From Octopus bimaculoides (taxonomy: Eukaryota), in NCBI RefSeq assembly GCF_001194135.2, contig NC_069003.1, positions 25,417,190 through 25,469,058 of the forward strand: DNA of 51,869 nucleotides, read 5' to 3'. This document shows, in pieces, positions 2,420-31,371 of the stretch. Both the position numbers and the translations under genes were made by a program. The notes beneath the pieces were generated by a model. It was not told the origin of the DNA. It made no database searches and worked only from the letters and a program-made list of their open reading frames with translations. Positions within the stretch are counted from its first letter, which is position 1. Each line of letters opens with the position of its first letter.

Positions 2420-2607
2420 ATGGCCAAAAATAACGAAATTATTATCCAAGTAAACTTACTAAATGCTAAATCAGAAGGGAAGAGAAATCTCACAGAAGGT
2501 GTTACAGAGATATGTCCCCAGAAAGGTATGAATCCCGGATTTTGTGAAGATGATGAGTGTATAAATCGAGAATCAGATATCAATGTTACACCTGATCAAC
2601 CTGTAAG
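2420..2607 (+). CDS. SLC16-like copy 1 exon 1 (cytoplasmic N-terminus)
   Basis: gaaaATGG start is shared with copy 2. Donor AG|gtaatt (phase 2) is the only donor in frame with exon 2. 180/188 nt identical to 18526-18713. Confidence 0.8.
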
Positions 2608-4554
2608 GTAATTAGTATTTTTTTTTTTTTAATTTAGTGATTTTAAGTACTTTATAATTGAGTACGGTAGTTGCATGTCGGTAACCGACAAATTACATCC
2701 ATCACACTGTTACCTAGAAACCAATATAAAAAAAAACCCCACATCACACACGGTTGGCAGCTACCCAAAATCCCACATAAACCCATGTCTCAACTGAGTC
2801 CATCATAAAGACTATCTCACTTCCTTCCTTTGACCTGAAAGGGCATGCAGGTTTTATCTGTCTGGTGGGTTTCGTGAACGAGGTTTTTGTGGTAGACGAG
2901 ACTGAAATGGCTGGAGACAGACAGCTACCTCTCACCAACTTTTTCGAGTTTCATTTGAATGAGAAAATATGAGTTGAGAGGGAAGTGCTACTTCTCAGCT
3001 AATTTGTTGAAAGATGAATGACAGTGGCGAGCATGGTCCAAGTGAAGAGGCCTGCTCTGAGCATGTACCTGTCAGAGAAGGATCACCTCTGACAGGTCAG
3101 AGAAGGACAACCGAGAGAAAGGGCACTTGCCTTACTGGTCAGCGTCACTATGGTTTTGTGCGGTTTCCGCATGTCACCCTCGGAGGTCTCCCCACTTTTA
3201 GGAATTTTACTCTGAATTTTTCCGGGTTTTCTCTTTTTGCTATTTCTTTTATTTACACGTTTTTTTTGTGTAATCCCCCATGTGTAAGTCTTGTGATCAT
3301 CTTGGAATTAAGGTTAATTTCTTAATGACCACAGATTACTAGTCATAGATGTGATAGTATTACTGAAACCATAATTCTGGAACGCATGCACTCAACATCA
3401 TTTTTTACTACTACAATATGTACTCACCTTGAGGTTCGACGTGATCGGATGGTGAAGTAGAATTGCTTTTCCGGGAAGAATTAGGTTAAGCAGTACAGAC
3501 AATCTTCATAAATCCACGTGGTGAGTCGGCGGCATTGCACATGAATGATTGTAAAGTCAGTGCCCTGAGACTCAGTTCAAAACCAAAATTCATCAAAAGA
3601 AACGGTGGTCTGGCGCAGGTGTGGTCCATTATAATTTCATTAAACTGGGCTCATCAATCATGGTCGAAGTATACTGCAGCCAACTGGACCAAATGATGCA
3701 GAAACTTACAAAAAAACAGCCTAGGTTAGTCAACAGATCCACTCCTATTTTATTGCAAAACACCAAACCACACATCGCAAAAATGACATTGATGAAACTA
3801 CAGGAGTTGGAGTTGGAAGTTCTCCATCATCCAGTTGCATAAAAGAGATATCTGGTGTAATCCTCCTTACACAAATTTTGTTTTAAAAAATCAAAGCATT
3901 TAACAGATAACATTACTGTTATTAACCATCATAAACTAAGTAAACTGTTCCTAAATAGGTACAAAACAGATGCACATATGAATAGAGTCCCTAATCATTC
4001 TCTTGTAACTTGTTCTTATTGGCAAGTTTCAAACATCTTTAGTGAAGCAGTTGTGTCTGAGCCACACTCTGTGTGGCTAACACAGACAATAATTTATCTC
4101 CTTTTCACCCAAACTATGATCACCAGATTTGATTACGTAAGCAGTAACCCTAATTATGATACCTGACATGTGACTATAATACTAACAAAACTATCCCTAT
4201 CAACAACGTTCTGGACAGTCTTGATCGCAATGCACATGACCAGTTGATTCTATCCCTTGCTATTCTATCCCTGTTCCTTCCCTCCAATGTTATAGAAATC
4301 CTCTTCCTGCCTTATATTCTTGTTCTACTCCCCTTCCTTCAGCCATTTAAATCTCTGGCACTACAATGCAAACTGCTTTTTGCCGATCTTCTCTTCATGA
4401 GGAAAGCCGGTCTTATTGTAATATTTCTCTGTGTCTGTTTACTGATTATATACCCATCACTTATTTGCATATTCCGTCTGCAAGTTATGATTATTGCATA
4501 ATTGCAGGAACCGCTGTCGATCGAGCTAAGAAATTGCATATATTTTCATTCTCC

Positions 4555-4597
<43 letters not shown>

Positions 4598-6963
4598 NNN
4601 NNNNNNNNNNNNNNNNNNNNNNNNNNNNNNNNNNNNNNNNNNNNNNNNNNNNNNNNNNNNNNNNNNNNNNNNNNNNNNNNNNNNNNNNNNNNNNNNNNNN
4701 NNNNNNNNNNNNNNNNNNNNNNNNNNNNNNNNNNNNNNNNNNNNNNNNNNNNNNNNNNNNNNNNNNNNNNNNNNNNNNNNNNNNNNNNNNNNNNNNNNNN
4801 NNNNNNNNNNNNNNNNNNNNNNNNNNNNNNNNNNNNNNNNNNNNNNNNNNNNNNNNNNNNNNNNNNNNNNNNNNNNNNNNNNNNNNNNNNNNNNNNNNNN
4901 NNNNNNNNNNNNNNNNNNNNNNNNNNNNNNNNNNNNNNNNNNNNNNNNNNNNNNNNNNNNNNNNNNNNNNNNNNNNNNNNNNNNNNNNNNNNNNNNNNNN
5001 NNNNNNNNNNNNNNNNNNNNNNNNNNNNNNNNNNNNNNNNNNNNNNNNNNNNNNNNNNNNNNNNNNNNNNNNNNNNNNNNNNNNNNNNNNNNNNNNNNNN
5101 NNNNNNNNNNNNNNNNNNNNNNNNNNNNNNNNNNNNNNNNNNNNNNNNNNNNNNNNNNNNNNNNNNNNNNNNNNNNNNNNNNNNNNNNNNNNNNNNNNNN
5201 NNNNNNNNNNNNNNNNNNNNNNNNNNNNNNNNNNNNNNNNNNNNNNNNNNNNNNNNNNNNNNNNNNNNNNNNNNNNNNNNNNNNNNNNNNNNNNNNNNNN
5301 NNNNNNNTACTTAACTGGTTTCACTTATTTAAAAATATTTTCAAAAGTAAAGTGTGAAGTTTAGTTTACAAAAATTTATTCAAATCAAGTGATAGCCACC
5401 CACACTATTGTTACACCTGAAAACGAATACTGGATGACAATGGCATTTAAGGGATTTATCTGCTGTATTCTTTCACCACAACTTTCTCTCACTGTTTCTT
5501 TCTGTTTCTGTTGTACCTGGATTTCAAAGGGCCAGCCTTGTCACACTCTGTGTCACGCTGAAGATCCCCGAGAACTACGTTAAGGGTACNNNNNNNNNNC
5601 TGTGTCACGCTGAAGATCCCCGAGAACTACGTTAAGGGTACACGTGTCTGTGGAGTGCTCAGCCACTTGCACGTTAATTTCACGAGCAGGCTGTTCTGTT
5701 GATCGGATCAACTGGAGCCTTTGCCGTCATAACTAATGGAGCGCCACGCTATATACATAAGACTATTGAAATTATAAAAGTACATTTTAATTAGTACTGT
5801 GCTGCTACAAATTGTTAGTACTGTACTACTGTTATATGTTCTGTTTTACCACAACTACTACTATTACCACTGCTGCTGCTCTTCTACTACTACTATTATT
5901 GCTACAACTACTACTGTAGTTTTTCTCTATTTGCAGGACAGTGGAGTGTACACCGGAGGGTCACACATCAAGTCAATGTTCTTCTTTCATGAAATATCTA
6001 TCTTATGTTTTTATATTATACAACAATGTGTTGGGTTTTGGTTTTGCTTATTCTCTCGGAATTCTATACACCTACTTTATAAGAGAATTTAACACTACAA
6101 AATCTGAAACAGCCATGATAACATCTGCATGTAGTGCAACTTTGGGTGGTGCAGGTGAGTATTCATTAACTAATAGCAGTTAGTTTTACTACCAGTAGAA
6201 AAAAGGAAATAACTAATATTTTGGTTAATAACCTTTGCCCTCTCATCTTGTCATTTGGAACCGTTTGTGAATAACCTAAAATATGCCATATTCTTACACT
6301 TTTGGAAGAAGAAATAGTTCAGAGCTAGAAGTATATGTAACAATATTAAAGATCAAACAACAAATATTAATATTCCTTCAAGCAATAATCTTACATATAA
6401 TAAAATGTAACTTGTATCTCATTGGTTACACTGGGTAAAGAATAGTAAAATGACAAATGGAGTGGGAGCAAGTAACAGTCAGAGGTGTTGAATGCAGGTA
6501 AATTATTAAAAAAAAAAAGGCTTTGCTCTGAAGACTCTTTGTATTTTGACCAAAACAAAACTTTTTATTATAAATTGTATTTAATTTATCAGTTTCGCAT
6601 ACACATATATAAGCATTTATCTGAAACTAAATATCAAACTCTTTTGTTTGCAAAATATTAAGGTCCACATAATATATATATAAATGTTACATGAACTAAA
6701 TAACCTCCTAAGCAGACTTAGTGCAGATATGAGTAGAATATGGGAACTGGTATTAAGGAAAGATACAGAAATATTAGATTTATAAGCCCTAAAATTCACT
6801 CTATAATTTCCCATGGGCATATACTGTTTAGTTTATGTATTTTCCAGTGATGTTCTCTGTCAATTATTTTAACTTCATCCCACAGAGGAAGGTGGTCTCA
6901 GTTTTTCCATCCGTCCAACGCAGTAGTTGTACTAACAAGTAATATTCATAGCCACTTCAACAT

Positions 6964-7005
<42 letters not shown>

Positions 7006-9383
7006 TGTACATATATATATCATCAGCATCATCATCGTTTAGCGCATTTAAACCAGCCATATCCGGCCAAAAGTATTTTGCCTATTCTATGTTCAAACTG
7101 ACCAGATCTGGTCTCTCACACCAACCCTACAATATCGTTTTAAAAATTAACAGCTACCTCATCAAAATCTCATAGCTACAAGATAATGCATGATTAGTTC
7201 AAGACAATGTGGATAAAAAAGCATTAATCATGGCAGAATAATGTGAACACTAAAGGATTAATCAAAGAAATTTTAATTCTATCATTCTGTAAAATAATAT
7301 TTAATTAGTTTAAATGTACACAAATGCATAAAAATAATTTTTAATTCCATTAGACATTCTAAAATATATATATATGTATATACGTATATACATATAGTCA
7401 TCTACTATATCGTAGTGAAGACTAAAGCCTTGTGAATAGATTTGGTAGATGCAATGTGAAAGAAGACTTCCGTGTATATTTGCATTTATACCTATATATG
7501 TGTGTATGTACGTGTGTGTGTACATGCATTGTGTGGATGATATTTTCAATCGCGACGTTACAACCACATCTGATTCTTCAAATGTTTTAATTCCGTGTAT
7601 GTACATATATTTACTAGAGTGCTGGCATTTATCAATGGTTTCCCTCATTGTATTGTTGTGCAATTTTTTTATCATTGATAAAACTGTCAGCATTTTTGAT
7701 GACATGAGTTTACTAGTTATTCTACAAAATTCCTTCTTTTCTTATTAACAAGATATAATAATTATCTTATTCTATTTCTTCAGCATTTACCAAGATTTTT
7801 CTTAAATTCCCACTTTTCATTTGTAGGAATATTTGCAGGAATGTTGTACAGAAAAATTGGTATTGGACGGTCATATATCCTTGCCAGCGCTTTGTGTTCA
7901 ATTGGTTTGTTTGCAAGTAGCTTTACACCAAACATATGGTTTCTGTTTTTCTCACTTGGAATCTTATTTGGTAAGTTCAACAAATTATGGCTGAAATACT
8001 AACCAAGACATATTTGATTTATTCAGTTAGACATTGGTTAGAACTTCAATGTGGCTTGTAGCAGTACTCAGCATTCAAAACTCTATCAGTTGAGTTACAA
8101 GAAAAAGACACATCTTATTGAGTTTCTATATCTGGTGGAGGGAGACGGTCTGGTAAACTTGGTCCATATTTCAGCCAAACATTGTTCCGGTGCATTTGTG
8201 TGATGTTAAGATTAATGGAGAATTCCTTGCAGTTTCACAAAAAAATTATGGTTATAGATTGATATGCACAGAAGATATGAGGCTGGGCAGTCAGAGGACT
8301 CATAGAGGATTTTTTAGTTAACTGGTACCTATTCTGTTCTAACTTCATGTAAAAAATCTCCTCTCATCAAGCATACATCCTCACACATTAGCTGCTGGTA
8401 TTCAGCACAATAGTCTTTTTTAAAGTAACAATTTTAACATCAATCCGTGGACATGTTAATAAAAGCTAAATACTGGGATTGACTTTATTTGGGGGTAGCA
8501 CGCAACCAGACTGAATGTTCGCAGTACCTTTCTAAGCAGCCAAACAGACTATTTGATATTGGAAATCCTGTTAAGCTGCCGATATTCTCTCCTGAAGACC
8601 GTAGAGAATCCAACGCGAACATTGAAATTGTGATTGAAACAACATAGTAAATGTTTGTATATTTGTGCTTTAGTGCATGCAGAACCACTGACATGCATGA
8701 TTCTATGTAAATCTATTTTAACCCATTACCTCCCATAATTCTATTAACTGGAATTTTTTTATGAAACTTTGATTTCTAGCATAAAACAGTCTTAGAAACA
8801 CGCTGGAATGATCAAAATAACATTTTAAATAGAAATAAGCGAGATATTGGGTGAAAAAGTAGCAAACCTCATTTGAATATCAGAGAAATATACCTAGTAG
8901 ATATAGCAAAAAGGTTAGATATGTGTAAATATTGACAGATAATTACAAAATTTGTAATTTTTAAGTGATCTCATATGAGATCACTGGTAGGTAATGGGTT
9001 AATCACTCTGAGAAAATATTTCCTATACTTTGTTTAGAGAAAGAAGAGAATTTCATTGTTACATAATAAATGTAGAATCAAAATTCACATGATATCATAT
9101 TCATAGCTTCTTGATAACTATACCATGTTCATGATGTAGAGAATTAATCTACAATGGCTAAATTCACCTCACTGTAACAAAGTAATAGGTAACAAGTATC
9201 ATTCAGTGGTATAAATAGCTGTAAGTCTATGATGTTGATATGGTCTTAATGACTACAGCTGCGAGTCGAATTCTCGTTTCAGGTAAAGCTACTTTTGATC
9301 CAGTGTTTTGTCCACTTTGCGGTTTTACTCTATCTGCTTAACAGTATGAACCCATAGAGAAGCACTCACACACACACAGATAG

Positions 9384-9414
<31 letters not shown>

Positions 9415-12400
9415 TATATACCCATTATTATTGGAGCAGCAGGATGCATACCAATCCATCTGGAGCCAAATATGACTGAACTTGGAATCTTGGGGAGAGA
9501 AAGCAAATCCTTAATTTATAAGCTACAAATGATCGCGATATCTGAGACTATAGAAATCTGCAAGATTTTCTATAGACTTAAAGACTGACGCTTAAAACAG
9601 GATATTTTCCTTTACAACCTTGCTATCAAGTCAGTGGTTGGTCAAAATTTACTCTAAATTAAAAAGAGAAAGAGAAGACATACATACATACATACATTAT
9701 CAACTCGTAGGTAAGTATAACCATTGATGAAAATTATCACTTAAACTCTCACCTTCAAAGCCAAGTTATTCAGTAACAGACACGAGTAATACCTCTGGCT
9801 TCACAATGAGGTGAAGTTATTTCGGAGTTTCCCTCTCCTACGGAAATGTCTTGTAGCAAGACCCGTTTCTGTTGTGGCATTTTGTAGTCAACTAGCCTTT
9901 TATAGGCGCCACATGTTAATCTTTAATGAATGGTCATTTGATTTATCATGGGAGTTTGGAATATTTAGCTGAGTCCTGTATTTTGATTGGCTGAATATTG
10001 CAAGGGACATGAATCTCAGATCCAATCACGTAGTGCGTAACAATTTCTAAATAACTTAACTTGAACCGTTGCTGGGAGTCTATATTTACTGATATATAAC
10101 CTTAACAAAACCTCTGTAATAGGGAGTTGAGAGGATTCCAGGAGGACACATCATATTTTCCTGTTGTAATAATGAAGCCAGAGCTGAATTATCTAAACAA
10201 TGGATGAACTATACAGCCACCAGAATCCATGATGTGTTTATTCAATCCACTGTAAAATTTAGCAAAGCAATAAAATATTTCTTGGTTTACTACGGAAACT
10301 TGGATACCATTATATAACATGTGTTGCATGTTAACTCATAAAAATAATACAAGAAACAAACTTTAAAATAACAGCATGACTTTATTCCTCAGCTAAACTA
10401 TATAGTGGCCCTCCAGTTGAGATGACGATCATAGTGATGTAAAAAAAAATCAGTTCCAATGATGGGGTAAGGGAGATCAGCTATAAGAAAAAATCACTTG
10501 AACTCTCTTCATAAATTCAAATATTTTTGTCATATGTTGGTATCGGTGAATGATTTACACATGTATACATTCATACATACAAAAATACATGCATGTGCAG
10601 GCAGGAATACACATGTACATTTCTACATGAGTATCTACACAGCACTGTTCATACATCAAAACCAAAAGCCATTCATATCTTATATAGATTCCCTCGCTGA
10701 ATAATCTTGAGACTGTGTGCTTATGTAACAAATCTACAATATCTTTAATACAATCATCTTTCTTTATATTTTATTTCAGGTTCTGGAGCAGCCATCAACA
10801 ATATCGTCAGTTACGCAGCCTTGGAGAAATTATTCCACCAAAATGTTCAAATTCTATCCATTATACTGACATTATGTGCCCCATTCGGAATTTTATGTGT
10901 ACCATATTTAGTAAATTTTTTATTAAATATCTACTCTTGGAGAGGAGCTTTGTTGATTATTTCTGGCTTCTGTTTGAACATGTGTTTTTCAGGATTGTTA
11001 TCGAAAGTTGATAGAAAACCAAAATCTGATGCGAAGGTTGAACGACTAAAAATATTTGATATAAAAATATTGAAAAACAAACGTTTCTTGATATTATCAA
11101 CTAGTGCATCAGTAAATACATGTTGTGGTTCCCTTCTTCTGCTCCTTATTGTAGATTTTTGGGTTGGAAAGGGTCATCCAATGTTAGAGGGTATTACACT
11201 AGTTACTTTTGTAAGTATTTCAAGTTTGGCAAGCAGACTTGTCTTTTGCTTCTTCAGCCTCTTATTCGACATAAGACCAGTACTCATTCTCATATTTTAC
11301 ATAGTTTGTGGTACTAGTGGAACGTTCTTCATTTTTGCTCCTTTGTGTGATACTTATTCACCATTAGTGTTCCTGATAGTCTTGAATGGATTTTCTCGCG
11401 GCTTGTTCTCCACATTACGTCCCCTGGTCTTCAAAAAAGTTGTCGGTATTGAAGCTTACCCACTAGCGATTGGTTATACTTACACTGTAACTGGTATATG
11501 TGCAATACCGATGGCAACTATTGTAGGTAAGTGTGAAAGTCTTCATCTCTTCTGCTCCAGACTTTGTCGGTCATAATTTTACTATGTCTCTAATCCCACA
11601 GTTGGCTTCATCTGCTTTCTGATTAGTGGCTTACTTGTGATACAGGAAACACTGAGATATTCACTGTTAAATCTATTCACCACAGATAAATTATAAAGAC
11701 AATAAAAGATAGAACTAAGTGTTTTTCTATTAATTTACAATTGCATTCTACATATATGTCTGGATTAACAAAGCTACAAAACTGTATACAGAAGACGAAA
11801 GCGAAATCGTGATGGCATCACCATTTGAGTGTGATCGTTACCAGCATCGCCTTCCTGGCACTTGTGCCAGTGGCACGTGAAAAGTCATTCAAGTGAAATT
11901 GTTGCCAGTGCTGTTGGACTGGCTCCTGTGCAGGTGGCATGTAGAATACACCATTTTGAGCGTGGCCGTTGCCAGTACCACCTGACTGGCCTTCATGCCG
12001 GTGGCACGTAAAAGCACCCACTACACTCTCGGAGTGGTTGGCGTTAGGAAGTGCATCCAGCTGTAGAAACTCTGCCAAATCAGATTGGAGCCTGGTGTAG
12101 CCATCTGGTTCACCAGTGCTCAGTCAAATCGTCCAACCCATGCTAGCATGGAAAGTGGACATTAAATGATGATGATGATGATATAACATTAAAGGTGATG
12201 AAACAATGTAAAAGAATACAATTTTAGATGTTTACATGTGACCTCTAACTTTTTGGCTTAAAATCTTTTTTTTTTCTTTTCTAGGTAAAATCACAGATCT
12301 TACACAGAGTTATGACTTTGCTTTTTATCTCACTGGACTATTTGAAATTCTTATGGTTTTGTTATTAGGATCTACATACATACTTATTACTTGTATGAGA

Positions 12401-16754: not shown

Positions 16755-16945
16755 GTAGTAGTAGTAGTAGTGACCCTGTTGGTAATGGTAAGTGCAGTGA
16801 CCTCTGTCCGTGTCAGTAGCAGTAGTTAATTAGTTGTAGTGGTAGGGGTGGAAGCAGCAGCAGAGGCAGCAGTAGTAGTGACCGTAATAACAGTAGTAGT
16901 AGTAGTAGTAGCAGCAGCTATAGTAGTGATAGTAGTAGCAGTGAT
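16755..16945. repeat. Compound (GTA)n/(GCA)n trinucleotide tract
   Basis: Direct reading; generates the poly-T/poly-V ORFs. Confidence 0.85.
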
Positions 16946-17285
16946 TGTTAGAATAAATATATATGTATATATATATATACATAGATATATATATGTATGT
17001 ATATACATAGATAAATATATATATATATATANNNNNNNNNNNNNNNNNNNNNNNNNNNNNNNNNNNNNNNNNNNNNNNNNNNNNNNNNNNNNNNNNNNNN
17101 NNNNNNNNNNNNNNNNNNNNNNNNNNNNNNNNNNNNNNNNNNNNNNNNNNNNNNNNNNNNNNNNNNNNNNNNNNNNNNNNNNNATGATATTTTTCGCAAA
17201 ATTTTTTTGAGCTGCAAATCTCTCCACAAACCAGTCAGCAAATTTCCTCCACTTCCCATGGCCAGGTGACTGAAGATGCTGCGTA

Positions 17286-18525: not shown

Positions 18526-18713
18526 ATGGCCAACGATAACGAAATTATTATCCAAGTAAACTTACTAAATGCTAAATCAGAAGGGAAGAGAAATCTCACA
18601 GAAGCTATTACAGAGATATGTCCCCAGAAAGGTGTGAATCCCGGATTTTGTGAAGATGATGAGTGCACAAATCGAGAATCAGATATCAATGTTACACCCG
18701 ATCAACCTGTAAG
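18526..18713 (+). CDS. SLC16-like copy 2 exon 1
   Basis: ORF 18526..18717; donor AG|gtaatt; paralogous to 2420-2607. Confidence 0.8.
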
Positions 18714-21700: not shown

Positions 21701-24700
21701 GACATCTAAACAGCAATGGTGTTGTGATAAGACACTGAATCATAGTTGACATTCTCACTATAAGCCTTCTCAGTTACTGGATTCTGCCTGTGGTCGCCTC
21801 TGCATCATCTCCTTTCTGCTCACTGACTTTTTCCTATGGTGTTTTAGTATTTATAATTATCCAAACTAGTTAGAAGGAGAAACATATTATTGAGAACAAT
21901 AGATTTCATTGGCGGTCTGTTATCTCTATTCTAGCTTTTGGTGGCCCAGAAGAGGTTAGAAGGGTCAAGTGGCAAAGACATTATTCTGCTTAGCGAAGGC
22001 ATCTGGCAAATGTAACTGCTGTCACTCACAGAAAAACTATTGTTTTACCGTGAGAAAAGTGCTATTGAACTGTTATGTGAAATTTGGCTATTGAAGATCA
22101 AATCCACGCTATACCTGCACAAACCACTACAGTTCTTAGCATTAGGCGTACAGTAATTGAATTTGATTTCAAACTGCTGACTAGGAAAAGAGTAAATAAC
22201 ATCCACATAGCAATGGGATCAAATGACTCAGTGCAAGTAACCGACTTGGTTGGAATTTGTAGTTTGCATTGCCTATATGGGCACTTACCAAATCTCTCGG
22301 ATGGTCTATTTAGGTACAATACAATTTTCTTGATGCGCGACTCAAGTAGGATAGATGCTGAAAGAATTAGGGCGATATCAAGAATTTTTTTTAATGCGAA
22401 TTTCTATTGAAAACAACCTTAAAGAAGCAAATTTCTTGATGTTACTTTGTAGTTGAATATTGACCGGTCCTTTCCTTTCCATTCACCAAACAAAAAATTT
22501 TAAGTAACTGAATATATTTTTAAATCATCCTAGAAGTATAATAAATTATATGATTAAAGGAGTTTCCACCATAATTTCAAAATTAACTACTAATGATCTT
22601 TATGTAGAGCTGGCTATAAAGATTTTTTTTTATTTATTCCCAACTCAAATAACTCCCATTTTGGTTAAAATAAGTAACAGACATTCGAAGTCACTTTAAA
22701 AGCATCTGAATAATATGCAAGATGAAAAGGGGGATATTTTATATCTCATCTAAATATCCATTATAAAAACATTGAGGTTAAGGTAAGTTCAGTGAACAGT
22801 AACTTAATTACTTCTAATACTGAGATCTATAAGTTTTTATCTAAAAACTTAACTGGCCACAATAACTATTATAAATCTAGGAAAAATGCAAATGCATAAT
22901 GCTTTAAATATATCCAAATCCTCTAATACGTTTAGGTACTCAAATAGTAAACTCTAATTTGGCTTCTGAACAAGACCGACGCACTAAAACTTGAGTAAAA
23001 CATTACAGGCAAACCAACAATAACGTCAGCAGCAGGGACAGTACTTGACCATTGATCAGTAACCGTCGGTTACGTAAGAGGGAAATCTTGTATAAATTCT
23101 CCTTATACAATAAATTTCGTTTCGCAAATAGCTAAAAAAAAAAAAAAAAGAATTAAGGTACTACAGAGTAATTTCCCTGCCCCCAGTAAATAAAGGAAGG
23201 TATTTAATAAACACTATATTAAACTTTCATTTTCAAATGCGCCCAATTTAGCAGATAACATAAACTGCTATTAACCACCATTGTTGTTGTTGTTGTTGTT
23301 GGCACTCCGTCGCTTACAACGTCAAGGGTTCCAGTTGATCCGATCAACGGAACAGCCGGCTCGTGAAATTAACGTGCAAGTGGCTGAGCACTCCACAGAC
23401 ATGTGTACCCTTAAGGTAGTTCTCGGGGATATTCAGCGTGACAGTGTGCCAAGGCGTCCACTCACTTCAGTGCCCACATCCTGTGCATTTCCCACTTCAA
23501 ATCATCACTTTTTCTTCCTTTTCCTCTTTGATCCTGTTGCCATCGGGACGTGCTATGTCGATTATCAGGCATGTTTTATCGTTTTTGTTCACCACAACAA
23601 TGCCAAGTTGCCAACATCTAATCTGATGGTCACACTGATTATTATTATCATTATTATTATTATCATTATTGAGTGAGGTGGTTAGGGCAGCGGACTCATG
23701 GTCATAGGAACGCGGTTTCAATTCCCAGACTGGACATTGTGAGTGTTTATTGAGCGAAAACACCTAAAGCTCCACGAAGCTCCGGCAGGGGATGGTGGCG
23801 AACCCTGTTGTACTCTTTCACCACAACTTTGTCTCACTCTTTCTGCCTGTTTCTGTTGTACCTGTAATTCAAAGAGCCAGCCTTGTCACACTGTGTCACG
23901 CTGAATATCCCTGAGAACTACGTTAAGGGTACACGTGTCTGTGGAGTGCTCAGCCACTTGCACGTTAATTTCACGAGCAGGCTGTTCCGTTGATCGGATC
24001 AACTGGAACCCTCGACGTCGTAAGCAACGGAGTGCCAACAACATTGAGTGAGAGAGCAGTGTATGCCATCAAAGTGACACTGGGGTAAAATATATGAAGC
24101 CCAGTATACCCATCATGACTACTCATCTGATAAGGGTACACCAGGCACATATATCACAGCCATATGTGCGCGACATAGTGATCTCATATCCAACCAGAAT
24201 TTGATTGCTTCTATTCCATAGTAATGCGGGATTTTGGTGTAAAGATTGATAACATCTTGGGTAACCAATATTGCTACTTCATCAATTGTTTTTGGTAGGT
24301 GTTCTAGCATGTCTAAATCGTCTCTAATGAAGCTTTTGATGTATTTCAGCAAGGGTGTTTCTACTTGTGAAGTCATTCACTCGTAAATATCATCACACAC
24401 AACATGGACAAAAATTTCTTCTTAAAAAAAATACATATTCAAATAAGTAAACCATAACATCATGAATAGCGAAAGTGAAACCGGTTGAAATATTAAAAAT
24501 TATATTAAAACTATGTAAAGTGTGCGTATTTTCCTTTTTTAATTTCTTATATATATTACAACTGTGAGGATAATTGAAATTCCTCCTTTTCTGTTCGCAG
24601 CCACTTGGCTGAAACCCATAAATAAATAAATAAATAAATAAATATATATATATGACATCCATATAATATGTATATATTTTAAAAAGATATTAAACTATAT

Positions 24701-24822
24701 GCAACAAAGGCATTTCTCTTCCACTTTTTATATTTTTTTACACATATTTTCAACTCATAATTTTGCCACGTGGTGTATACTGAATCTTCAGTATCTTTAC
24801 ACCTTGTATATTTTTATATTGC

Positions 24823-24854
<32 letters not shown>

Positions 24855-25101
24855 TATAATCTTGAGTACCACAATATTAACCTATGCACATGCATTAAGT
24901 GGAATACTTCAATATAATTGAAGAATATAAAACCAGAAATAAAATATAGCGTATGCACAGAGCTGAGTTTGGTTTTACTGTGAAGGCACGCAATATACAT
25001 AAGACTACTGAAATTATAAAAGTACATTTTTATTAGTACTGTGCTGTTACCTCTGCTCTTGCTAGAGCTTCTGCTGCAATTACTGTTGCTGCTTCTGCTG
25101 T

Positions 25102-25143
<42 letters not shown>

Positions 25144-28100
25144 AGTTTTTCTTCTCTATTTCCAGGGCAGTGAAGTGCACACCGGAAGATCATACACCTA
25201 GTAAATGTTCCACTTTCATCAAATATCTGGCTTATGTTTCTTTATTATACAACAATATTTTGGGTTTTGGCATTGCTTATTCACTCGGTATTTTATACAT
25301 CTACTTTATCAGAGAATTTAACACTACAAAATCTGAAACAGCCATGATAACATCAGCGTGTAGTGCAACTTTAGGTTGTGGAGGTAAGTATTCAAAAATT
25401 AATAGCAATTGGTTTTTCCAACAAAAAAGAAAAAAAAACAAATAAAATGAACTAATACTTTGGTCAATAACCTTTGCCCTCTCACCTTGTCATTTGGAAC
25501 CGTTTCTGAGAAACCCAAACATATCACATCCTTATACATTTGAAAAAAAGAAATAGATCAGAGTTAGGAAAATATGTGAAGATATTAAAGATCAAAAACA
25601 AAAATATTAATTCTCCTTCAAGTACTAATTATTCTAGAAAATTCCTTCTTTTTTTTTCATATTAACAGAATATAATAATTATCTTATTCTATTTCATCAG
25701 TATTTAGCAAAATTTTCCTTAACTTTTCAATTTTCATTTGCAGGAATATTTGCAGGAATGTTGTACAGAAAAATTGGTGTTGGGTGGTCATTTATCCTTG
25801 CCAGCGCTTTGTGTTCAATTGGTTTGTTTGCAAGTAGCTTTACACCAAACATATGGTTTCTGTTTTTCTCACTTGGAATCTTATTTGGTAAGTTCAACAA
25901 ATTATAGTTGGAATACTAATAAAGACTATTTTATTTATTCAGTTAGACATTGGCTAGAACTTCAATATGGCTTGCACAGTACTCAGCATTCGAAACCCTG
26001 GCAGTTACAAGAAAAAACCACAAGTGTGGATTAAAGGCACGGAAATATAGTCCTTCTTACCTCGACTTGCAATCAGGTACCGCCTGCAAATTTGTTCAAG
26101 TGTTAACATGTGTCGTCATGGCCTCTCTTCGCCACATCTGGCCTCTATTGATGACAACATGACAAAGAGGGAAACTTTCCTTCTCGCACGTCGACGTGAC
26201 ATCATCTCTTCCCTTCTGGTCTTCCTGTACCATCCCTCCCTCTCCTTTCCATTGCACGCCCCACTGATCTAAGGATCACTGCTCTTCTGTTTTGTTTCGT
26301 AATCGTCCATCCACCTGGGGAGATGTGACGTTCCTTTGAGATCTGTGTAGGGTCACAGAGCCGGCTTCTCCCTCCTCTTTGTCATCAGAAGAGCTAATCA
26401 CCCATCGAATACCAGGACATGACACAGCATTCCATCCACTGATACACTATTTGGAGTACTAATCGCGGTCACCTTTCCTTTTTCCCACTGCATTGTGCAC
26501 CAAGCGTCTGGGGCTTCAACCACACTTCATCTCCAGCCTGCACAGATGTAATCCTTCTACCTCTAGCTGCTGTGGCACCATGCTCAGGTGTCTCCATTTG
26601 TGCCAGAATATGACCTTGTGCGGAACCGACTCTTCGGCTTGCCCTACCCTGGAGACATGTTCTACCAGAAAACTGCCTCCATAAGGGAGATTCATCCCCT
26701 CTCAGCCATGGCTTTAATCATACGGTGGTGCCATTCCACAATCCTGTTTCCACCTGGCCTATATGCAACTCTGAAGAAGCGTCTTGTGCTCCACCTTTCG
26801 AGCATCTCTCTCAGCTGCTCTGAGCGAAAAACTGCACTGTTGTCCATCAATAGCTCGTCTATAGACCCCCTTTCCATAAACACCGCATTCAGCACTTCTG
26901 CAACTTCTGCAACTTCATATAGCCATTTGCCCAGGTCCACAGTCAACCGTTGAAAGCTACACCTTTCCCCAATAGTGCGTCATGTAATGGCTAGCCTCTT
27001 CCAGTCTTCTTCTACCTGAATCTTTCCTAATTCGTGTATGCTCGGAGAAGGATCAATCGATATTTTCCTCTGGTAGTATCATTCAAGATGTACCAACCTT
27101 TTGCAGCACTTTTCATTTAACGGTTGAATAAAGTGTGGCAGTAAATTACAACTTTTGTTCTTGTATTTCTTCCGCTGTTATACCTGACTCATTTGGAACC
27201 AAGGGCCAGAACTATACTACTCATCCTCCTAAAGTACTAACAGCAATTTTGAGAATCTGCAGGTTCAGTCGGAATCTGATTATACTTACAAATCAAAGCC
27301 AATCCTTGAAAAGATAGTACAAGCTTGTAGAGAAACTGAGAAATCATGAATGTGAAGAACAATTCTAGCATTTAACTTCCTATAATCTTCACAAGGATAC
27401 CAATCATCATCAATTTTCTTCCGTCCCAAGAACAGAGAAGCCCAATTACTTCATGATGGTTGAATTATTCCAAGCACCAACTTGTGGCTGAATTTGTCCT
27501 TCGCAATTTTCAATTTGACTGGGGCTTATCGCCTCGGTTGAGTGGAAACAGGAGGATGATTCATGACAATGTAGTGCGTTACCTATTGCAAAAGATTCCT
27601 CACACAAAAGATTGTGCAAGTTGTACCCTGAAATGTTTGCAGGATAGTATAGTAATGAGGCGATACTATCCTCATTAGTATAGCCTCATTACTAATGAGG
27701 ATAGTATTAGTAATGACAATACTTTCCTCATAGTATTGAGAATAGTATTGTCCTCAATACTATCCTCAATTGTATTGAGGATAGTACAATACAATTATAC
27801 TAATGACAAAGAGGTTTAAAAAAACCCAGAGAACCGACTGCATCAGGTTTTACACTCGTACCTTTAAGTTGATCAATGAGTCAACTAGTTTTTCTATTCC
27901 ATCAGTTGACAAGATCATAGTGATGCAAGGAAGATCAGCTATTAAAAAAATCCACATGAATTCTCTTCGTAAATTCAAATATAGCATCATGGACATTTTG
28001 CCATCTGCAGGTATCGGTGAATGATTTACCTCCTGTAACGTAACTGCTGTTGGCTGCCTCGTGTCATATAAAATTTGAAAAATTTGGTGGTTAGCTGCTT

Positions 28101-31100
28101 TTTCTAGCAGTCTGGTCACCAATTTGTGGATGTGCAGTGATACTCAATTTCAAATGTTGAACGTCCAGCATTATCGATTTGTAGTATGGTTGACAGCTCA
28201 CTTTTACTGTCAGAGTTGCCAGTTTGTGAAAGGTGGATCGGCTGGGGTCTGGATTATTTGGTCATACTGCATGCTGCTCCCAAATGGAGCCAATTACAAT
28301 ACTTAGGTTATATAATATGTTTTGTGGAGGTGCAATGGCCCAGTGGTTAGGGCAGCAGACTCGCGGTCATAGGATTGCGGTTTCAATTCCCAGACTGGGC
28401 GTTGTGAGTGTTTATTGAGCGAAAACACCTAGTGCTCCACGAGGCTCCGGCACGGGATGGTGGCGAACCCTGCTGTACTCTTTCACCACAACTTTCTCTC
28501 ACTCTTACTTCCTGTTTCTGTTGTGCCTGTAATTCAAAGGGTCAGCCTTGTCACACTGTGTCACGCTGAATATCCCCGAGAACTACGTTAAGTGTGCTCA
28601 GCTACTTGCATGTTAATTTCACGAGCAGGCTGTTCCGTTGATCAGATCAACTGGAACCCTTGACGTCATAAGCGACGGAGTGCCAACAACATGTTCCTAC
28701 ATACATACAAATGCAGGTAAGAATACACATGAACATTTCTACATAAGTATCAATACAGTATCGTACACACACACACATACACAGCCTTTCCCTCATTGGG
28801 TAATCTACAGGCCGTGTGCTTCTGTATCAAATCTACAATATCTTTAATACAATCATCTTCCTTTATATTCTATTTCAGGTTCTGGAGCAGCCATCAACAA
28901 TATTGTCAGTTATGCAGCCCTGGAGAAATTATTCCACCAAAATGTTTATATTCTATCCATTACACTGACAATATGTTCTCCATTTGGAACTTTATGTGTA
29001 CCATTTTTAGTAGATATGCTCTTAAATATCTACTCTTGGCGAGGAGCATTGATGATTCTTTCTGGCTTCAGTTTGAACATGTGTTTTTCAGGATTGTTAT
29101 CAAAAGTTGATAGAAAACCAAAATCTGATGCGAAGGTTGAACGACTAAAAATATTTGATATGAAATTATTGAAAAACAAATGTTTCTTGATACTATCAAC
29201 TGCTGCATCAATAAATACATGTTGTGGTTCCCTTGTTTTGCTCCTTATTGTTGATTTTTGGGTTGGAAAGGGTCATCCAATGTTAGAGGCTATTACACTA
29301 ATTACTTTTGTAAGTATTTCAAGCATGGCAAGTAGACTTGTCTTTGGTTTCTTAAGCCTCTTATTCGACTTAACACCAGTACTCATTCTCATATTTTATA
29401 TTGTTTGTGGTGTTGGTGGAATATTCTTCGTTTTTGCTCCCATGTGTGATACTTATTCACCATTAGTTTTCCTGGCAGTCTTGAATGGATTTTCTCGTGG
29501 AATGGTAGCCACAATACGTCCCCTGGTCTTCAAAAAAGTTGTCGGTATTGAAGCTTATCCAATAGCTATTGGCTTTACTTTCACTGTGAATGGAATATGT
29601 ACAGTACCAGCTGCAACTATTGTAGGTAAGTGTGACATGCCTGATCCAGGCTTTGTGAATCATAATATTGGTTTCAAATTCTGGTACAAGACAGCAATTT
29701 TGTGAGAGGTGGTATGTTGATTACGTTGACCCCAGAGTTCAACTGGTACTTACTTTATTGACCCCAAAAGGATGAAGGGCACTATCAAAACCAGCAGTAT
29801 TGGAATTCAGAAAATAAATTAGGAAAAACTACCTAAACAGTTATTCCAGCACAGTAACAATTCAACCAGCTCACTGCCTTTGTCAGTTATATTGGTTTCA
29901 AATTTTGGCACAAGGCCAGCAATTTTAGGGGAGGGTTAAGTTGATTAAATGAACCCCAGTGTTCAACTTGTACTTAATTTATCAATCCAGAAAGGATGAA
30001 AGGCAAAATCACCCTAGGTGGAATTTGAACTCAGAATGTAAAGATAAATGAAATGTTGCTAAGTATTTCACCTGGTGTGCTAACGATTTTCCTTGCTTGC
30101 TGCCTTGTCAATCATTTTTTTTTTTTATTTGCAAACAACTTGCAGATGTAAGTGCTACCAATTGAAAGCTCTGCATACTGGATGCTAGCAAGTTTATGGG
30201 GTCATCAGGAGAGAATGCACGCCATTTTGGGGCCTTCCTCTCAATGGCATCATTGTGCACCAGTCCCACTCACTGAAATGAAGCCCTGCCTGCTAGATCA
30301 ACTGGTTATTAGATTTTCCTCAAATTTCTTCTAACCATTGCTCATCATCTCTTTATAACCAAATCCAGTGGTTTGCCTTCTCCACTGTAGTCTGGATGTC
30401 ACCAATGGTATCCAGACTACTATAATGTTAACAATGCATCTGTCACTACAACCGGATTCAACTGCTTTCTGGCTGGTGATTTATTTAGGTTATAGCTAAC
30501 ACTGAGATGTTGATAGCTAATTATTTTGAAATTTTATAGAACATATATAAATGTTTGACTGAAGATAGCATCACAACTGAATACAGAAGATAAACACAGG
30601 TAACATACAACATAGAAAGTGATGAAACAATGTAACTGAATATAGTTACATATATTTAGATGTGAAGTTTACATGGCTCAGTGGTTAGAGTGTTGGACTC
30701 ATAATCTTGAGGATGTGAGTTTGATTCTTGGATCGAGTTGTATGTTGTGTTCTTGAGCAAGACACTTTATTTCATATTGCTCCAGTTCTTTCAGCTGTAG
30801 AAATGAGTTGCGATGTCACCGGTGCCAAGTTGTATTGGCTTTTGCCTTCCCCTTGGATAACATCAGTGGCATGGAAAGGTGAGGCTGATATGCATGGGCA
30901 ACTGCTGGTCTTCCATAAACGACCTTGCCCAGATTTTTGCCTTGGAGGGGAACTTTCTAGGTGCAATCCCATGGCCATTTATGACTGAAGGGAGTCTAAA
31001 TTTACATGTAGCCTTGATCTTTTCCTTGACAATTGTTTGGTTTCAAATTTGTATAGCTTGATGGTGTAAAATATTATATCAAACTAGAGTAACTGTAGCA

Positions 31101-31371
31101 ACTTAACCAGCTTTCATTCTAAATAACCTTATCTGTTATTATTTCACTGTTGTTTTTTTTTTTTATAGGTAAAATCACAGATATTACACAGAGTTATGAC
31201 TTTGCTTTTTATCTCACTGGACTATTTGAAATTCTTACATTCCTATTATTAGCATCTTTGTACTTCCTGGTAACTTGCCAGAGAAAAAGGAATCATAAAT
31301 TTAAGCCAGAGAATTTCACATCCCATAATTTAATAGCAATGAAGTCTCATTATGAAAAGAACAACAGATGA
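18526..31371 (+). CDS. SLC16/MCT-like MFS transporter, tandem copy 2; join(18526..18713,25166..25383,25744..25887,28879..29625,31169..31371), 499 aa
   Basis: Five exons (188+218+144+747+203=1500 nt), GT-AG, same phases as copy 1, no assembly gap inside the gene. 75 aa differences over the 481 shared residues by hand count. Confidence 0.92.
19750..20940 (+). mobile_element. L1/Tx1-clade LINE ORF2 remnant
   Basis: Broken frames give VVVYAPTG (19754), EWTW, TGHKFVV, GPSYWMLNA (20119) and WPITLLNAQF..VKVLAKWLARVV: APE end, G-P-x-Y-W-K-L-N linker and RT start. Confidence 0.75.
20940..21050 (-). mobile_element. Short RT remnant resembling site-specific (HERO/NeSL-type) non-LTR elements
   Basis: ..TYVSMSHKLVEQALQRLHIPWKTTDLIL resembles DLANAYGSIPHKLVE.AL.R.H.P as I recall it; very short. 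Confidence 0.4.
22030..22620 (+). mobile_element. Penelope-like RT remnant (Poseidon-type)
   Basis: AMGSNDSVQVTDLVGI (cf. TMGSYDGAEVCELVG), GLFRYN (cf. GLYRDD), ISIENNLKEANFLDVTL, and a degenerate SNHP motif (NHPRSII). Confidence 0.75.
23298..23455 (-). mobile_element. SINE family A, 3' part
   Basis: Reverse complement of the family A 3' module with a (TTG)n tail on its left. Confidence 0.88.
23678..24042 (+). mobile_element. SINE family A, near full length
   Basis: 10-bp TSD ATTGAGTGAG (23668-23677, 24043-24052); inserted into another repeat. Confidence 0.9.
24185..24385 (-). mobile_element. Penelope-like RT fragment
   Basis: PLLKYIKSFIRDDLDMLEHLP...ILVTQDVINLYTKIPHYYGIEAIKFWL fits the Penelope DV.SLYT.IP region. 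Confidence 0.8.
25102..25143. repeat. (TAC)14 microsatellite upstream of copy 2 exon 2
   Basis: Direct reading; an interrupted version precedes copy 1 exon 2 (5850-5915). Confidence 0.9.
25166..25383 (+). CDS. SLC16-like copy 2 exon 2
   Basis: tttccag|G acceptor and GGAG|gtaagt donor; 218 nt as in copy 1. Confidence 0.92.
25744..25887 (+). CDS. SLC16-like copy 2 exon 3
   Basis: ttgcag|GA acceptor and TTTG|gtaagt donor; 144 nt; 140/144 identical to copy 1. Confidence 0.92.
26020..26945 (-). mobile_element. Gypsy-type LTR retrotransposon integrase remnant
   Basis: ELLMDNSAVFRSEQL...AYRPGGNRIVEWHHRMIKAMAERG (integrase core) and a downstream VSVDGM segment; absent from copy 1 intron 3. Confidence 0.8.
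27640..27800. repeat. Patchwork of alternately oriented GAGGATAGTATT-like motifs
   Basis: About 8 variants in both orientations with local hairpins. Confidence 0.75.
28325..28690 (+). mobile_element. SINE family A, full length
   Basis: Matches 1427-1778; absent from the paralogous intron. Confidence 0.9.
28879..29625 (+). CDS. SLC16-like copy 2 exon 4
   Basis: ttcag|GT acceptor and GTAG|gtaagt donor; 747 nt open; overlaps ORF 29016..29705. Confidence 0.95.
29662..30110 (-). mobile_element. Two tandem copies of SINE family D (Meta-domain-like)
   Basis: Each has gaccccag...actggtactt..tttat.ga(cccc)aaaggatgaa.ggc; units near 29662-29880 and 29890-30110. Confidence 0.75.
30672..31010 (+). mobile_element. 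tRNA-derived SINE, family E (CORE-like central module)
   Basis: tggctcagtggttagag head; gttgtgttcttgagcaagacacttta module shared with 49241-49545. Confidence 0.7.
31169..31371 (+). CDS. SLC16-like copy 2 exon 5 (stop TGA)
   Basis: poly-T then atag|GT; ORF 31150..31371; 18 aa longer than the copy 1 terminus. Confidence 0.92.

What the first reader, a model, noticed from the sequence alone, without database searches (positions are those of the whole stretch)
2420..31371. SLC16-like pair with a rebuilt, Arg-rich predicted substrate pocket
Seen, aligned by eye to human MCT1 from memory. The TM8 Arg (R313) is kept but its partner D309 is Ser (ISSLASR/ISSMASR), and K38 is Tyr. In TM10 (NGFSRGLFSTLRP / NGFSRGMVATIRP) the positions of F367 and L374 are both Arg. 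The family signatures DGGWGW (before TM1) and YFxKRR (TM4-5 loop) are replaced by PEGHTS/PEDHTP and LFHQNV, and the TM6-7 loop is only about 20 aa. Knowledge: K38, D309 and R313 underlie H+-coupled lactate transport and F367 gates substrate size in MCT1. Inference: not a lactate/H+ symporter; three uncompensated cavity arginines suggest a di- or poly-anionic substrate and possibly an undescribed cephalopod transporter subfamily.
Basis: partly seen in the sequence, partly recalled or inferred. Interest (0 to 1): 0.75.

Follow-up and report, generated by a model that had tools for sequence, protein, structure and literature searches.

The report
Octopus SLC16-like transporters with three arginines
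Two neighbouring octopus genes encode membrane transporters related to the lactate carriers of vertebrates. Their predicted substrate pocket has lost the proton-coupling residues and gained two extra positive charges, so they probably carry some multiply charged anion, but nobody has tested this.

Summary
The window is Octopus bimaculoides chromosome CM046623.1. It holds two intact, tandem, 5-exon + strand paralogs (481 and 499 aa, 84% identical), and a third copy lies 10 kb upstream. None of the assembly gaps touches coding sequence.

The proteins are 12-TM MFS transporters. Their best sequence and fold matches are all SLC16 proteins (MCT1/2/8/10) and the bacterial SfMCT. Both SLC16 signature motifs are missing and the TM6-7 loop is short (about 25 aa).

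The TM8 substrate-anchoring Arg is kept (R336). The proton-coupling K38 and D309 are Tyr/Ser and Ser/Gly, which is ordinary for non-classical SLC16 members. The unusual part is TM10. Arg sits at the MCT1 F367 / MCT8 D498 binding-site position (R390) and again seven residues on (R397). Both are invariant in Octopus and Argonauta. The triad occurs in none of 97 other cluster representatives.

My best reading is a proton-independent carrier or exchanger for a di- or polyanionic metabolite, by analogy with OxlT. This is inferred, not shown. I could not read the model's coordinates, so cavity exposure rests on homology and helix periodicity. The conserved TM12 Glu (E453) might neutralise R397.

Verdict: a new variant of a known kind, of moderate interest.

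The parts
2420..12433 (+). Gene A: 5-exon SLC16-like transporter gene, 481 aa. Exons 2420-2607, 5937-6154, 7827-7970, 10780-11526, 12285-12433. An alternative upstream ATG lies at 2405.
   Evidence: Spliced model with GT-AG introns. Identical to RefSeq P0002, 'monocarboxylate transporter 14 isoform X1' of O. bimaculoides. Pfam MFS_1, E 1.4e-23.
18526..31371 (+). Gene B: tandem paralog, 499 aa. Exons 18526-18713, 25166-25383, 25744-25887, 28879-29625, 31169-31371. No assembly gap inside.
   Evidence: 84% amino-acid identity to gene A, dS 0.195, dN/dS 0.42. Pfam MFS_1, E 1.3e-24.
11235..11237 (+). R336 codon of gene A (gene B: 29334-29336). This is the TM8 Arg equivalent to MCT1 R313, SfMCT R280 and OxlT R272.
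   Evidence: Invariant in the clade and present in 80 of 97 other representatives.
11223..11225 (+). S332 codon of gene A (gene B: 29322-29324), at the position of MCT1 D309. It is Ser or Gly in the clade.
   Evidence: MCT8 also has Ser here (PMC12078798).
11397..11399 (+). R390 codon of gene A (gene B: 29496-29498). This TM10 Arg is at the position of MCT1 F367 and MCT8 D498(D424).
   Evidence: Arg occurs here in only 1 of 97 other representatives. F367 is a binding-site residue (PMC12894981, PMC11176948).
11418..11420 (+). R397 codon of gene A (gene B: 29517-29519). This TM10 Arg is at the position of MCT1 L374, directly before the conserved Pro398.
   Evidence: It lies i+7 from R390 and i+3 from S394 (the S371 equivalent), so on the same helix face.
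6049..6051 (+). Y101 codon of gene A (gene B: 25278-25280), at the position of MCT1 K38. It is Tyr or Ser in the clade.
   Evidence: Profile and multiple alignments. The pairwise phmmer alignment gave I105 instead.
10827..10847 (+). TM4-5 loop KLFHQNV in gene A (gene B: 28926-28946), in place of the SLC16 signature KYFYKRR.
5980..5997 (+). SSFMKY, aa 78-83 of gene A (gene B STFIKY: 25209-25226). This is the true positional equivalent of the DGGWGW signature at the start of TM1.
   Evidence: MAFFT alignment with Haliotis and MCT1-like proteins that carry DGGWGW.
12344..12346 (+). E453 codon of gene A (gene B: 31228-31230). This clade-specific Glu lies in the middle of TM12 and is a possible counter-charge.

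Best explanation
Shown: the two genes are intact tandem paralogs of a three-gene array. They encode 12-TM major-facilitator transporters of a divergent, octopod-restricted clade descended from the SLC16 (monocarboxylate transporter) family.

Inferred mechanism:
- They are not MCT1-type H+/lactate symporters, because the proton relay (K38, D309) is absent.
- The conserved TM8 Arg (R336) still anchors one anionic group of the substrate, as in MCT1, SfMCT and OxlT.
- The new Arg at the central TM10 binding-site position (R390) supplies a second anion clamp.
- R397, two turns further towards the cytoplasm on the same helix face and next to the conserved gate Pro, lines the inner pathway.
- The pocket therefore most likely binds a small organic di- or polyanion. 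Candidates are a dicarboxylate, or a carboxylate that also bears a sulfo or phospho group.
- By analogy with OxlT, repulsion between the basic residues in the empty site would disfavour reorientation of the empty carrier. The protein would then work as an exchanger or as a strictly substrate-gated facilitator.
- The missing DGGWGW motif suggests independence from basigin-type chaperones.
For: Gene structure and integrity.

Homology to SLC16:
- Gene A by phmmer matches MCT1 at 2e-18. Every PDB hit with E below 1 is an SLC16 protein or SfMCT.
- The wider family profile matches MCT2 and MCT1 at about 1e-114 to 1e-106.
- The AlphaFold2 model has pLDDT 83 and pTM 0.80 with 12 TM helices.
- The top 24 Foldseek PDB hits are all MCT1/2/8/10 or SfMCT, with target-normalised TM-scores mostly 0.8-0.87 (range 0.74-0.87).

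Residue mapping.

Binding-site status of the mapped positions:
- Tyr34, Lys38, Asp309, Arg313, Phe367 and Ser371 form the monocarboxylate site (PMC12894981).
- F367Y is an active-site mutant (PMC11176948).
- MCT8 D424 (D498 in the long isoform) aligns with F367, and MCT8 Ser367 aligns with D309 (PMC12078798).
- In SfMCT, R280 is the only positive residue in the site, and the protein has no significant affinity for di- or tricarboxylates (PMC9814091).
- In OxlT, R272 plus K355 bind the two carboxylates of oxalate, and their repulsion keeps the empty carrier open (PMC10070484).
- The TM8 Arg of an OFA-family protein aligns with R336.

Conservation and charge:
- All three Arg are invariant in 7 clade members from Octopus and Argonauta. 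The triad is absent from 97 other representatives.
- No Asp or Glu lies in the core of TM1, 2, 4, 5, 7, 8, 10 or 11.
- In other lineages, positions 390, 393 and 397 accept polar and charged residues, as expected for a cavity face and not for a lipid face.
Against: - No transport, expression or localisation data exist for any clade member.
- I could not read the model's coordinates. Exposure of R390 and R397 to the cavity is therefore inferred from homology and 3.6-residue periodicity. TM10 has Gly391 and Pro398, which can kink it.
- E453 in mid-TM12 is clade-specific and co-occurs with R397. It could neutralise R397 away from the cavity.
- dN/dS of 0.42 between the paralogs indicates only moderate constraint.
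- Several characterised SLC16 members that lack D309 carry zwitterions or monoanions (taurine for MCT7, thyroid hormone for MCT8). Loss of the proton triad does not by itself point to polyanions.
Confidence: 0.4

Rival explanations
1. The proteins are ordinary facilitative carriers for a monoanion or zwitterion, as MCT7, MCT8, MCT10 and MCT12 are for taurine, aromatic amino acids, thyroid hormone and creatine. The extra arginines would be structural or gating residues. R397 would pair with E453 (TM12) or with the invariant E199 of the TM4-5 loop at the cytoplasmic gate. R390 would hydrogen-bond to polar TM7 residues such as N296.
For: - E453 and R397 appear together in the octopod clade and in P0013 and P0016, and nowhere else among the representatives.
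- The TM4-5 loop lost its KRR cluster while the TM10 cytoplasmic end gained R397, K402 and K403, where MCT1 has E376 and D380. This looks like a charge swap across a gate.
- Non-classical SLC16 members without D309 carry non-polyanionic substrates (PMC8980330, PMC12078798).
Against: - R390 sits exactly at the central binding-site position, next to the retained R336, with no acidic partner in any cavity helix.
- By my recollection of general MFS topology, TM12 is a peripheral helix that packs against TM7 and TM11 and not against TM10. This was not tested here.
- The E453/R397 co-occurrence reflects a single evolutionary origin, so it is weak evidence.
Confidence: 0.3
2. The proteins are organellar (vesicular or lysosomal) anion transporters driven by membrane potential or anion exchange, functionally convergent with SLC17 or SLC37 carriers, and not plasma-membrane carriers.
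For: - A conserved N-terminal cytoplasmic extension of about 78 aa, predicted disordered, carries the invariant-looking motifs EIIIQVNLL and CPQKGxNPGFCEDDEC.
- The motif used for basigin-dependent surface trafficking is lost (PMC11176948).
- The pocket is Arg-rich, as in SLC17, SLC37 and OxlT. SLC37A4 and DgoT appear among the weaker profile and fold hits.
Against: - No recognised sorting motif was demonstrated.
- There are no localisation data.
- Sequence and fold are much closer to SLC16 than to SLC17 or SLC37.
Confidence: 0.15
3. The genes are recent, functionally redundant or decaying duplicates with no specific new function, and the Arg residues are tolerated drift.
For: - dN/dS is 0.42 between gene A and gene B.
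- RefSeq lists isoforms that lack TM1 (P0001) or exon 3 (P0006).
- Mollusc MCT families are known to expand massively by tandem duplication (PMC11939762).
Against: - All three O. bimaculoides copies and the orthologs in O. sinensis, O. vulgaris and Argonauta hians keep open frames.
- 188 alignment columns are invariant in the six-sequence octopod alignment A1, including all three Arg.
- dN/dS well below 1 shows purifying selection.
- The splice sites are canonical in both genes.
Confidence: 0.07

Closest known systems
Human MCT1/MCT2 (SLC16A1/A7), H+-coupled lactate/pyruvate symporters (PDB 6LYY, 6LZ0, 7BP3)
   Same: - Best sequence hits (E 2e-18 for the single protein) and best fold hits (target-normalised TM-score about 0.85).
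- 12-TM MFS fold.
- The TM8 Arg (R313 = R336) and the TM10 Ser (S371 = S394) are kept.
   Different: - K38 is Tyr or Ser and D309 is Ser or Gly, so the proton relay is absent.
- F367 and L374 are both Arg.
- Both signature motifs (DGGWGW, YFYKRR) are missing.
- The TM6-7 loop is about 25 aa against about 55 aa.
- There is an N-terminal extension of about 78 aa.
- Identity is about 20%.
MCT8/MCT10 (SLC16A2/A10), proton-independent thyroid hormone and aromatic amino-acid carriers
   Same: - Ser at the D309 position.
- A charged residue at the F367 position of TM10, facing the retained TM8 Arg.
- No proton coupling is expected.
   Different: - The TM10 charge is reversed: Asp (D498/D424) in MCT8/10 and Arg in the octopod clade. 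The pocket therefore has two like charges in place of an Arg-Asp pair.
- MCT8/10 keep the family signature motifs.
OxlT (oxalate:formate antiporter, OFA family, PDB 8HPK/8HPJ)
   Same: - The homologous TM8 Arg plus a second basic residue in the C-domain half of the pocket gives a dibasic site that binds a dianion.
- It provides a mechanistic precedent: repulsion in the empty site enforces exchange (PMC10070484).
- It appears among the profile and fold hits.
   Different: - The second basic residue is Lys355 on TM11, not an Arg on TM10.
- It is bacterial, with about 16% identity.
- The octopod proteins have a third Arg.
SfMCT (bacterial SLC16 homolog, PDB 6G9X)
   Same: - The fold.
- The TM8 Arg as carboxylate anchor.
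- TM10 residues at i and i+4 (Y331, F335) line the site, as do positions 390 and 394 here.
   Different: In SfMCT R280 is the only positive residue in the site, and the protein has no significant affinity for di- or tricarboxylates (PMC9814091). The octopod clade adds two Arg.
Lineage-specific SLC16 expansions in molluscs (for example 54 MCT genes in Sinonovacula constricta, PMC11939762) and other cephalopod MCT-like groups (P0013, P0014, P0017, P0018, P0021, P0033)
   Same: - Tandemly duplicated, divergent SLC16-like genes.
- The cephalopod groups also lack both signature motifs. Several carry a single TM10 Arg at position 393, or H390/R397.
   Different: Only the octopod clade combines R336, R390 and R397. 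It forms a clade with 100% bootstrap support.

Membership tests
SLC16 / monocarboxylate transporter family (TCDB 2.A.1.13) | 12-TM MFS fold that is closest to solved SLC16 structures | tested here: met
   The AlphaFold2 model has pLDDT 83 and pTM 0.80 with 12 helices. The top 24 Foldseek PDB hits are all MCT1/2/8/10 or SfMCT.
SLC16 / monocarboxylate transporter family (TCDB 2.A.1.13) | Significant sequence similarity to SLC16 members above other MFS families | tested here: met
   By phmmer, MCT1 scores 2e-18, MCT2 4e-16, MCT10 2e-8 and MCT8 2e-7, and no other MFS family is below E=1. With the wider profile, MCTs score 1e-114 to 1e-94 against 2e-27 for OxlT. In the NJ tree the clade nests among invertebrate SLC16-like proteins, some of which carry both motifs.
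SLC16 / monocarboxylate transporter family (TCDB 2.A.1.13) | N-terminal signature [D/E]G[G/S][W/F][G/A]W at the start of TM1 | tested here: not met
   The positional equivalent is SSFMKY or STFIKY. A regex for the motif finds no match in any clade member or in any related cephalopod group.
SLC16 / monocarboxylate transporter family (TCDB 2.A.1.13) | Second signature YFxK[R/K][R/L] leading into TM5 | tested here: not met
   LFHQNV stands in both genes.
SLC16 / monocarboxylate transporter family (TCDB 2.A.1.13) | Conserved TM8 arginine (MCT1 R313) | tested here: met
   R336 is invariant in the clade.
SLC16 / monocarboxylate transporter family (TCDB 2.A.1.13) | Large cytoplasmic loop between TM6 and TM7 | tested here: not met
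   The loop is about 25 aa (P0002 residues 264-288) in the model. In MCT1 it is about 55 aa.
SLC16 / monocarboxylate transporter family (TCDB 2.A.1.13) | Dependence on a basigin- or embigin-type ancillary glycoprotein | not testable with these tools
   I can only note that the motif implicated in the CD147 interaction is absent (PMC11176948).
Proton-coupled MCT1-4 subgroup | Charged triad K38 / D309 / R313 | tested here: not met
   The clade has Y or S at 101, S or G at 332, and R at 336.
OFA family (OxlT-like) | TM8 Arg plus TM11 Lys (R272/K355) and a Gly-rich NGGxRP motif in TM8 | tested here: inconclusive
   The TM8 Arg aligns. The hhalign probability is only 80%, and the alignment stops before TM10 and TM11. 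Similarity to OxlT (2e-27 with the wide profile) is far below that to SLC16.

The most novel reading that the evidence does not exclude
Within the SLC16 scaffold, octopods have evolved a dibasic or tribasic binding site. It converges on the solution used by OxlT, GlpT and SLC17-type carriers. The result would be the first SLC16-derived obligate exchanger or carrier for a di- or polyanionic metabolite (a di- or tricarboxylate, or a sulfated or phosphorylated small molecule), probably independent of basigin.
Probability: 0.25. Interest if true: 0.6.

Novelty: new variant of a known kind. Interest (0 to 1): 0.42.

Why it matters
Every characterised SLC16 and SfMCT pocket has a single basic residue, and its substrates are monoanions or zwitterions. 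A natural clade with an Arg at the F367/D498 specificity position and another Arg below it would be a test case. It would show how substrate charge selectivity and coupling mode can be rewired on this clinically important scaffold.

It would also add an orphan, lineage-restricted transporter to cephalopod physiology.

The finding is limited. It is a sequence-based prediction in a family already known for lineage-specific expansions, and the genes themselves are already annotated.

Tried and rejected
- Looked for further copies in the window by tblastn. There are only the two genes. The third paralog is upstream of the window.
- Rfam and tRNA scans of the window found nothing.
- The word-indexed homolog searches reached only octopods plus a few distant proteins. 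The last one, with P0013, did not reveal which species that transcript comes from.
- Tried to look up gene B's full protein on assemblies.
- Looked for the model's coordinates in the working folder. None are exposed, so I could not measure distances or accessibility.
- A variability-moment analysis of TM10 could not separate a cavity face from a lipid face, because the binding-site positions are themselves the most variable across the family. I used only the residue spectrum at those positions.
- The first NJ attempts failed, once on time and once on a missing outgroup. The third run worked.
- The pairwise phmmer alignment put K38 on Ile105. I rejected this in favour of three profile or multiple alignments that put it on Tyr101.
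- Pfam found nothing (E up to 0.01) for ORFs that looked to me like LINE reverse-transcriptase, integrase or Tc1 fragments. The exception is the mariner fragment at 3555-3839.
- Literature searches found no paper on this octopus clade.
Full report
**What is in the window**

Joining the open frames with canonical GT-AG introns gives two 5-exon genes.
- Gene A has exons 2420-2607, 5937-6154, 7827-7970, 10780-11526 and 12285-12433 (481 aa).
- Gene B has exons 18526-18713, 25166-25383, 25744-25887, 28879-29625 and 31169-31371 (499 aa).
- Exons 1-4 have identical lengths in both genes.

Gene A is identical to the RefSeq protein 'monocarboxylate transporter 14 isoform X1' of Octopus bimaculoides, apart from five optional upstream residues. 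It maps to chromosome CM046623.1 of assembly GCA_001194135.2.

**The gaps**

The gaps at 4598-5307 and 5590-5599 are inside intron 1 of gene A. The gaps at 15322-17183 are intergenic. Gene B has no gap and has the same exon 1 to exon 2 junction in the same phase. The gaps therefore do not affect the reading frames.

**Extent of the duplication**

tblastn finds only these two copies in the window. A self-comparison shows a tandem duplication with conserved exons and promoter-proximal sequence. A third paralog (P0003, 79% identical) lies 10 kb upstream on the same strand. The two Argonauta hians homologs are also tandem.

Genes A and B are 84% identical in protein, with dS 0.195 and dN/dS 0.42. 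Both are therefore under purifying, though not strong, selection.

**Family assignment**

- Pfam sees only the generic MFS_1 domain.
- Against all PDB sequences, gene A's best hits are MCT1 (2e-18), MCT2, MCT10, MCT8 and the bacterial SfMCT, and nothing else below E=1.
- A profile of the wider family hits MCT2 and MCT1 at about 1e-114 to 1e-106, SfMCT at 5e-53 and OxlT at 2e-27.
- An AlphaFold2 model built on a 43-sequence alignment has mean pLDDT 83 and pTM 0.80. It shows twelve long helices and a disordered N-terminal extension of about 78 residues.
- The top 24 Foldseek PDB matches to the model are all SLC16 proteins or SfMCT, with target-normalised TM-scores mostly 0.8-0.87 and down to 0.74.

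The proteins are thus homologs of the SLC16 family by sequence and fold.

Both family signature motifs are nevertheless absent. LFHQNV stands where MCT1 has YFYKRR.

The TM6-7 loop is about 25 residues.

For these reasons I call the proteins SLC16-like or SLC16-derived, and not canonical members.

**Residue mapping**

| MCT1 | Gene A |
|---|---|
| D309 | S332 |
| R313 | R336 |
| F367 | R390 |
| S371 | S394 |
| L374 | R397 |

K38 corresponds to Y101 in the hmmalign, profile and MAFFT alignments. Only the pairwise phmmer alignment shifted it to I105.

**Which parts are unusual**

An exhaustive profile search of 1.84 billion cluster representatives gave 4285 hits. Scores drop steeply after the octopod sequences.

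The next best hits are other cephalopod MCT-like groups from Sepia, Octopus, Argonauta and an unidentified RNA-seq assembly. Other lophotrochozoans follow.

| Position (MCT1 equivalent) | Finding in the 96-97 representatives outside the clade that cover the column |
|---|---|
| 336 (R313) | Arg in 80 |
| 332 (D309) | Asp in only 11 |
| 101 (K38) | usually Phe or Tyr |
| 390 (F367) | Arg in one, a hemichordate protein that lacks the TM8 Arg |
| 397 (L374) | Arg in six |

- 90 of the 147 representatives listed outside the two octopod ones match neither signature motif.
- The literature agrees that MCT8 has Ser at the D309 position (PMC12078798).
- MCT7 lacks D309 and is pH-independent (PMC8980330).
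- Loss of the proton triad and of the motifs is therefore ordinary for this part of the family.
- The combination R336+R390+R397 occurs only in the octopod clade, where all three are invariant in seven sequences from Octopus and Argonauta.
- The nearest relatives have His or a neutral residue at 390. Several carry a single Arg at 393 instead.
- A neighbour-joining tree gives the octopod clade 100% bootstrap support. It places the clade weakly (45%) beside other cephalopod groups, inside a lophotrochozoan expansion.

**Do the arginines face the cavity?**

The tool does not expose the model's coordinates, so this is inferred.

- R313 and F367, with S371, Y34, K38 and D309, form the monocarboxylate site of MCT1 and MCT2 (PMC12894981).
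- F367Y is used as an active-site mutant (PMC11176948).
- The same TM10 column is D424/D498 in MCT8 (PMC12078798).
- In SfMCT the TM10 residues Y331 and F335 (i, i+4) line the site, and R280 is its only positive charge (PMC9814091).

R336 and R390 therefore occupy experimentally defined pocket positions.

R397 is i+7 from R390 and i+3 from S394, so it lies on the same helix face, two turns nearer the cytoplasm. It immediately precedes a widely conserved Pro. In OxlT a TM10 Pro is part of the cytoplasmic gate layer (PMC10070484). I could not confirm that the two Pro residues align, because the hhalign alignment stopped before TM10.

In other lineages columns 390, 393 and 397 accept Asp, His, Tyr, Ser, Lys, Gln and Asn. 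That spectrum fits a water-exposed face.

No Asp or Glu lies in the core of any cavity-lining helix.

There is one caveat. Glu453, in the middle of TM12, is specific to the clade and its closest relative and co-occurs with R397. It might neutralise R397 or face an unknown partner.

**Mechanism**

Shown:
- homology to SLC16
- integrity of the genes
- conservation of the three Arg
- residue correspondences to MCT1

Inferred:
- there is no MCT1-type proton coupling
- R336 and R390 form a two-point anion clamp
- R397 lines the inner pathway
- the substrate is a small di- or polyanion

OxlT is the closest precedent. Its homologous TM8 Arg and a second basic residue bind the two carboxylates of oxalate. 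Their mutual repulsion in the empty site underlies exchange (PMC10070484). I give this reading a probability of about 0.4.

The main rival (0.3) is a monoanion or zwitterion facilitator in which the new Arg residues have gating or structural roles. It is supported by the E453 co-occurrence. It is also supported by an apparent charge swap between the TM4-5 loop, which lost KRR, and the cytoplasmic end of TM10. That end gained R397, K402 and K403, where MCT1 has E376 and D380.

**Novelty**

The genes are already annotated automatically as MCT14/12/13-like. Mollusc SLC16 families are known to expand by tandem duplication (PMC11939762). I found no paper on this clade and no characterised protein with this pocket. 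It is a new variant of a known kind, of moderate interest until a substrate is found.

Noticed in passing
Upstream of the window; locus L003 10001-23492 (CM046623.1 25,396,132-25,409,623): A third paralog (P0003, 481 aa, 79% identical, with the same three Arg) lies 10 kb upstream of gene A on the same strand. The locus is therefore a three-gene tandem array. The two Argonauta hians homologs (P0008, P0007) are tandem too (L004).
   Followed up: partly
window 12344-12346 (gene A) and 31228-31230 (gene B): Glu453 lies in the middle of TM12. It is invariant in the octopod clade and present in P0013 and P0016, and it co-occurs with R397. Its role is unexplained. It may be a buried counter-charge or a contact for an ancillary subunit.
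   Followed up: partly
window 2420-2607 and 5937-5980 (gene A); 18526-18713 and 25166-25210 (gene B): An N-terminal extension of about 78 aa is predicted disordered (pLDDT below 50). It nevertheless carries conserved motifs (EIIIQVNLL, CPQKGxNPGFCEDDEC) shared by the Octopus paralogs and partly by Argonauta. It may be a sorting or regulatory segment.
   Followed up: no
window 6091-6099 (gene A) and 25320-25328 (gene B): An N-glycosylation sequon (NTT) lies in the predicted extracellular TM1-2 loop. It is conserved in most clade members. From memory, classical MCTs are not glycosylated and rely on basigin.
   Followed up: no
window 1428-1785, 23678-24044, 28311-28695, 31938-32323 (-), 43623-43957 (-): An interspersed repeat family of about 350 bp (83-93% identity between copies), SINE-like, lies in introns and flanks. 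ARAGORN and Rfam found no tRNA or RNA family in it.
   Followed up: partly
window 11961-12185, 35321-35546 (-), 37124-37348, 40081-40283 (-), 51205-51375 (-): A second dispersed repeat family of about 220 bp. One copy sits in intron 4 of gene A, just upstream of exon 5.
   Followed up: no
window 3555-3839 (+): A mariner-type transposase fragment (Pfam Transposase_1, E 1.5e-9) in intron 1 of gene A. Other ORFs looked like LINE reverse-transcriptase, integrase or Tc1 remnants (20719-20922, 26695-26979 on the - strand, 36510-36818, 46606-46935), but they gave no Pfam hit.
   Followed up: partly
window 42253-42596 and 43188-43532: A 345-bp inverted repeat (96% identity) flanks the assembly gap at 42599-43083. 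It could be a transposon with terminal inverted repeats, a palindrome, or an assembly artefact.
   Followed up: no
RefSeq isoforms P0001 (gene B) and P0006 (gene A): The annotated alternative isoforms skip most of exon 2 (which removes TM1) or all of exon 3 (which removes parts of TM2-TM4). They could not form a complete 12-TM transporter.
   Followed up: no
gene A versus gene B, TM10 residues 392-396 (window 11403-11417 / 29502-29516): The paralogs differ on the putative binding face: LFSTL in gene A against MVATI in gene B, so F393V and S394A. This hints at diverged substrate preference within the array.
   Followed up: no
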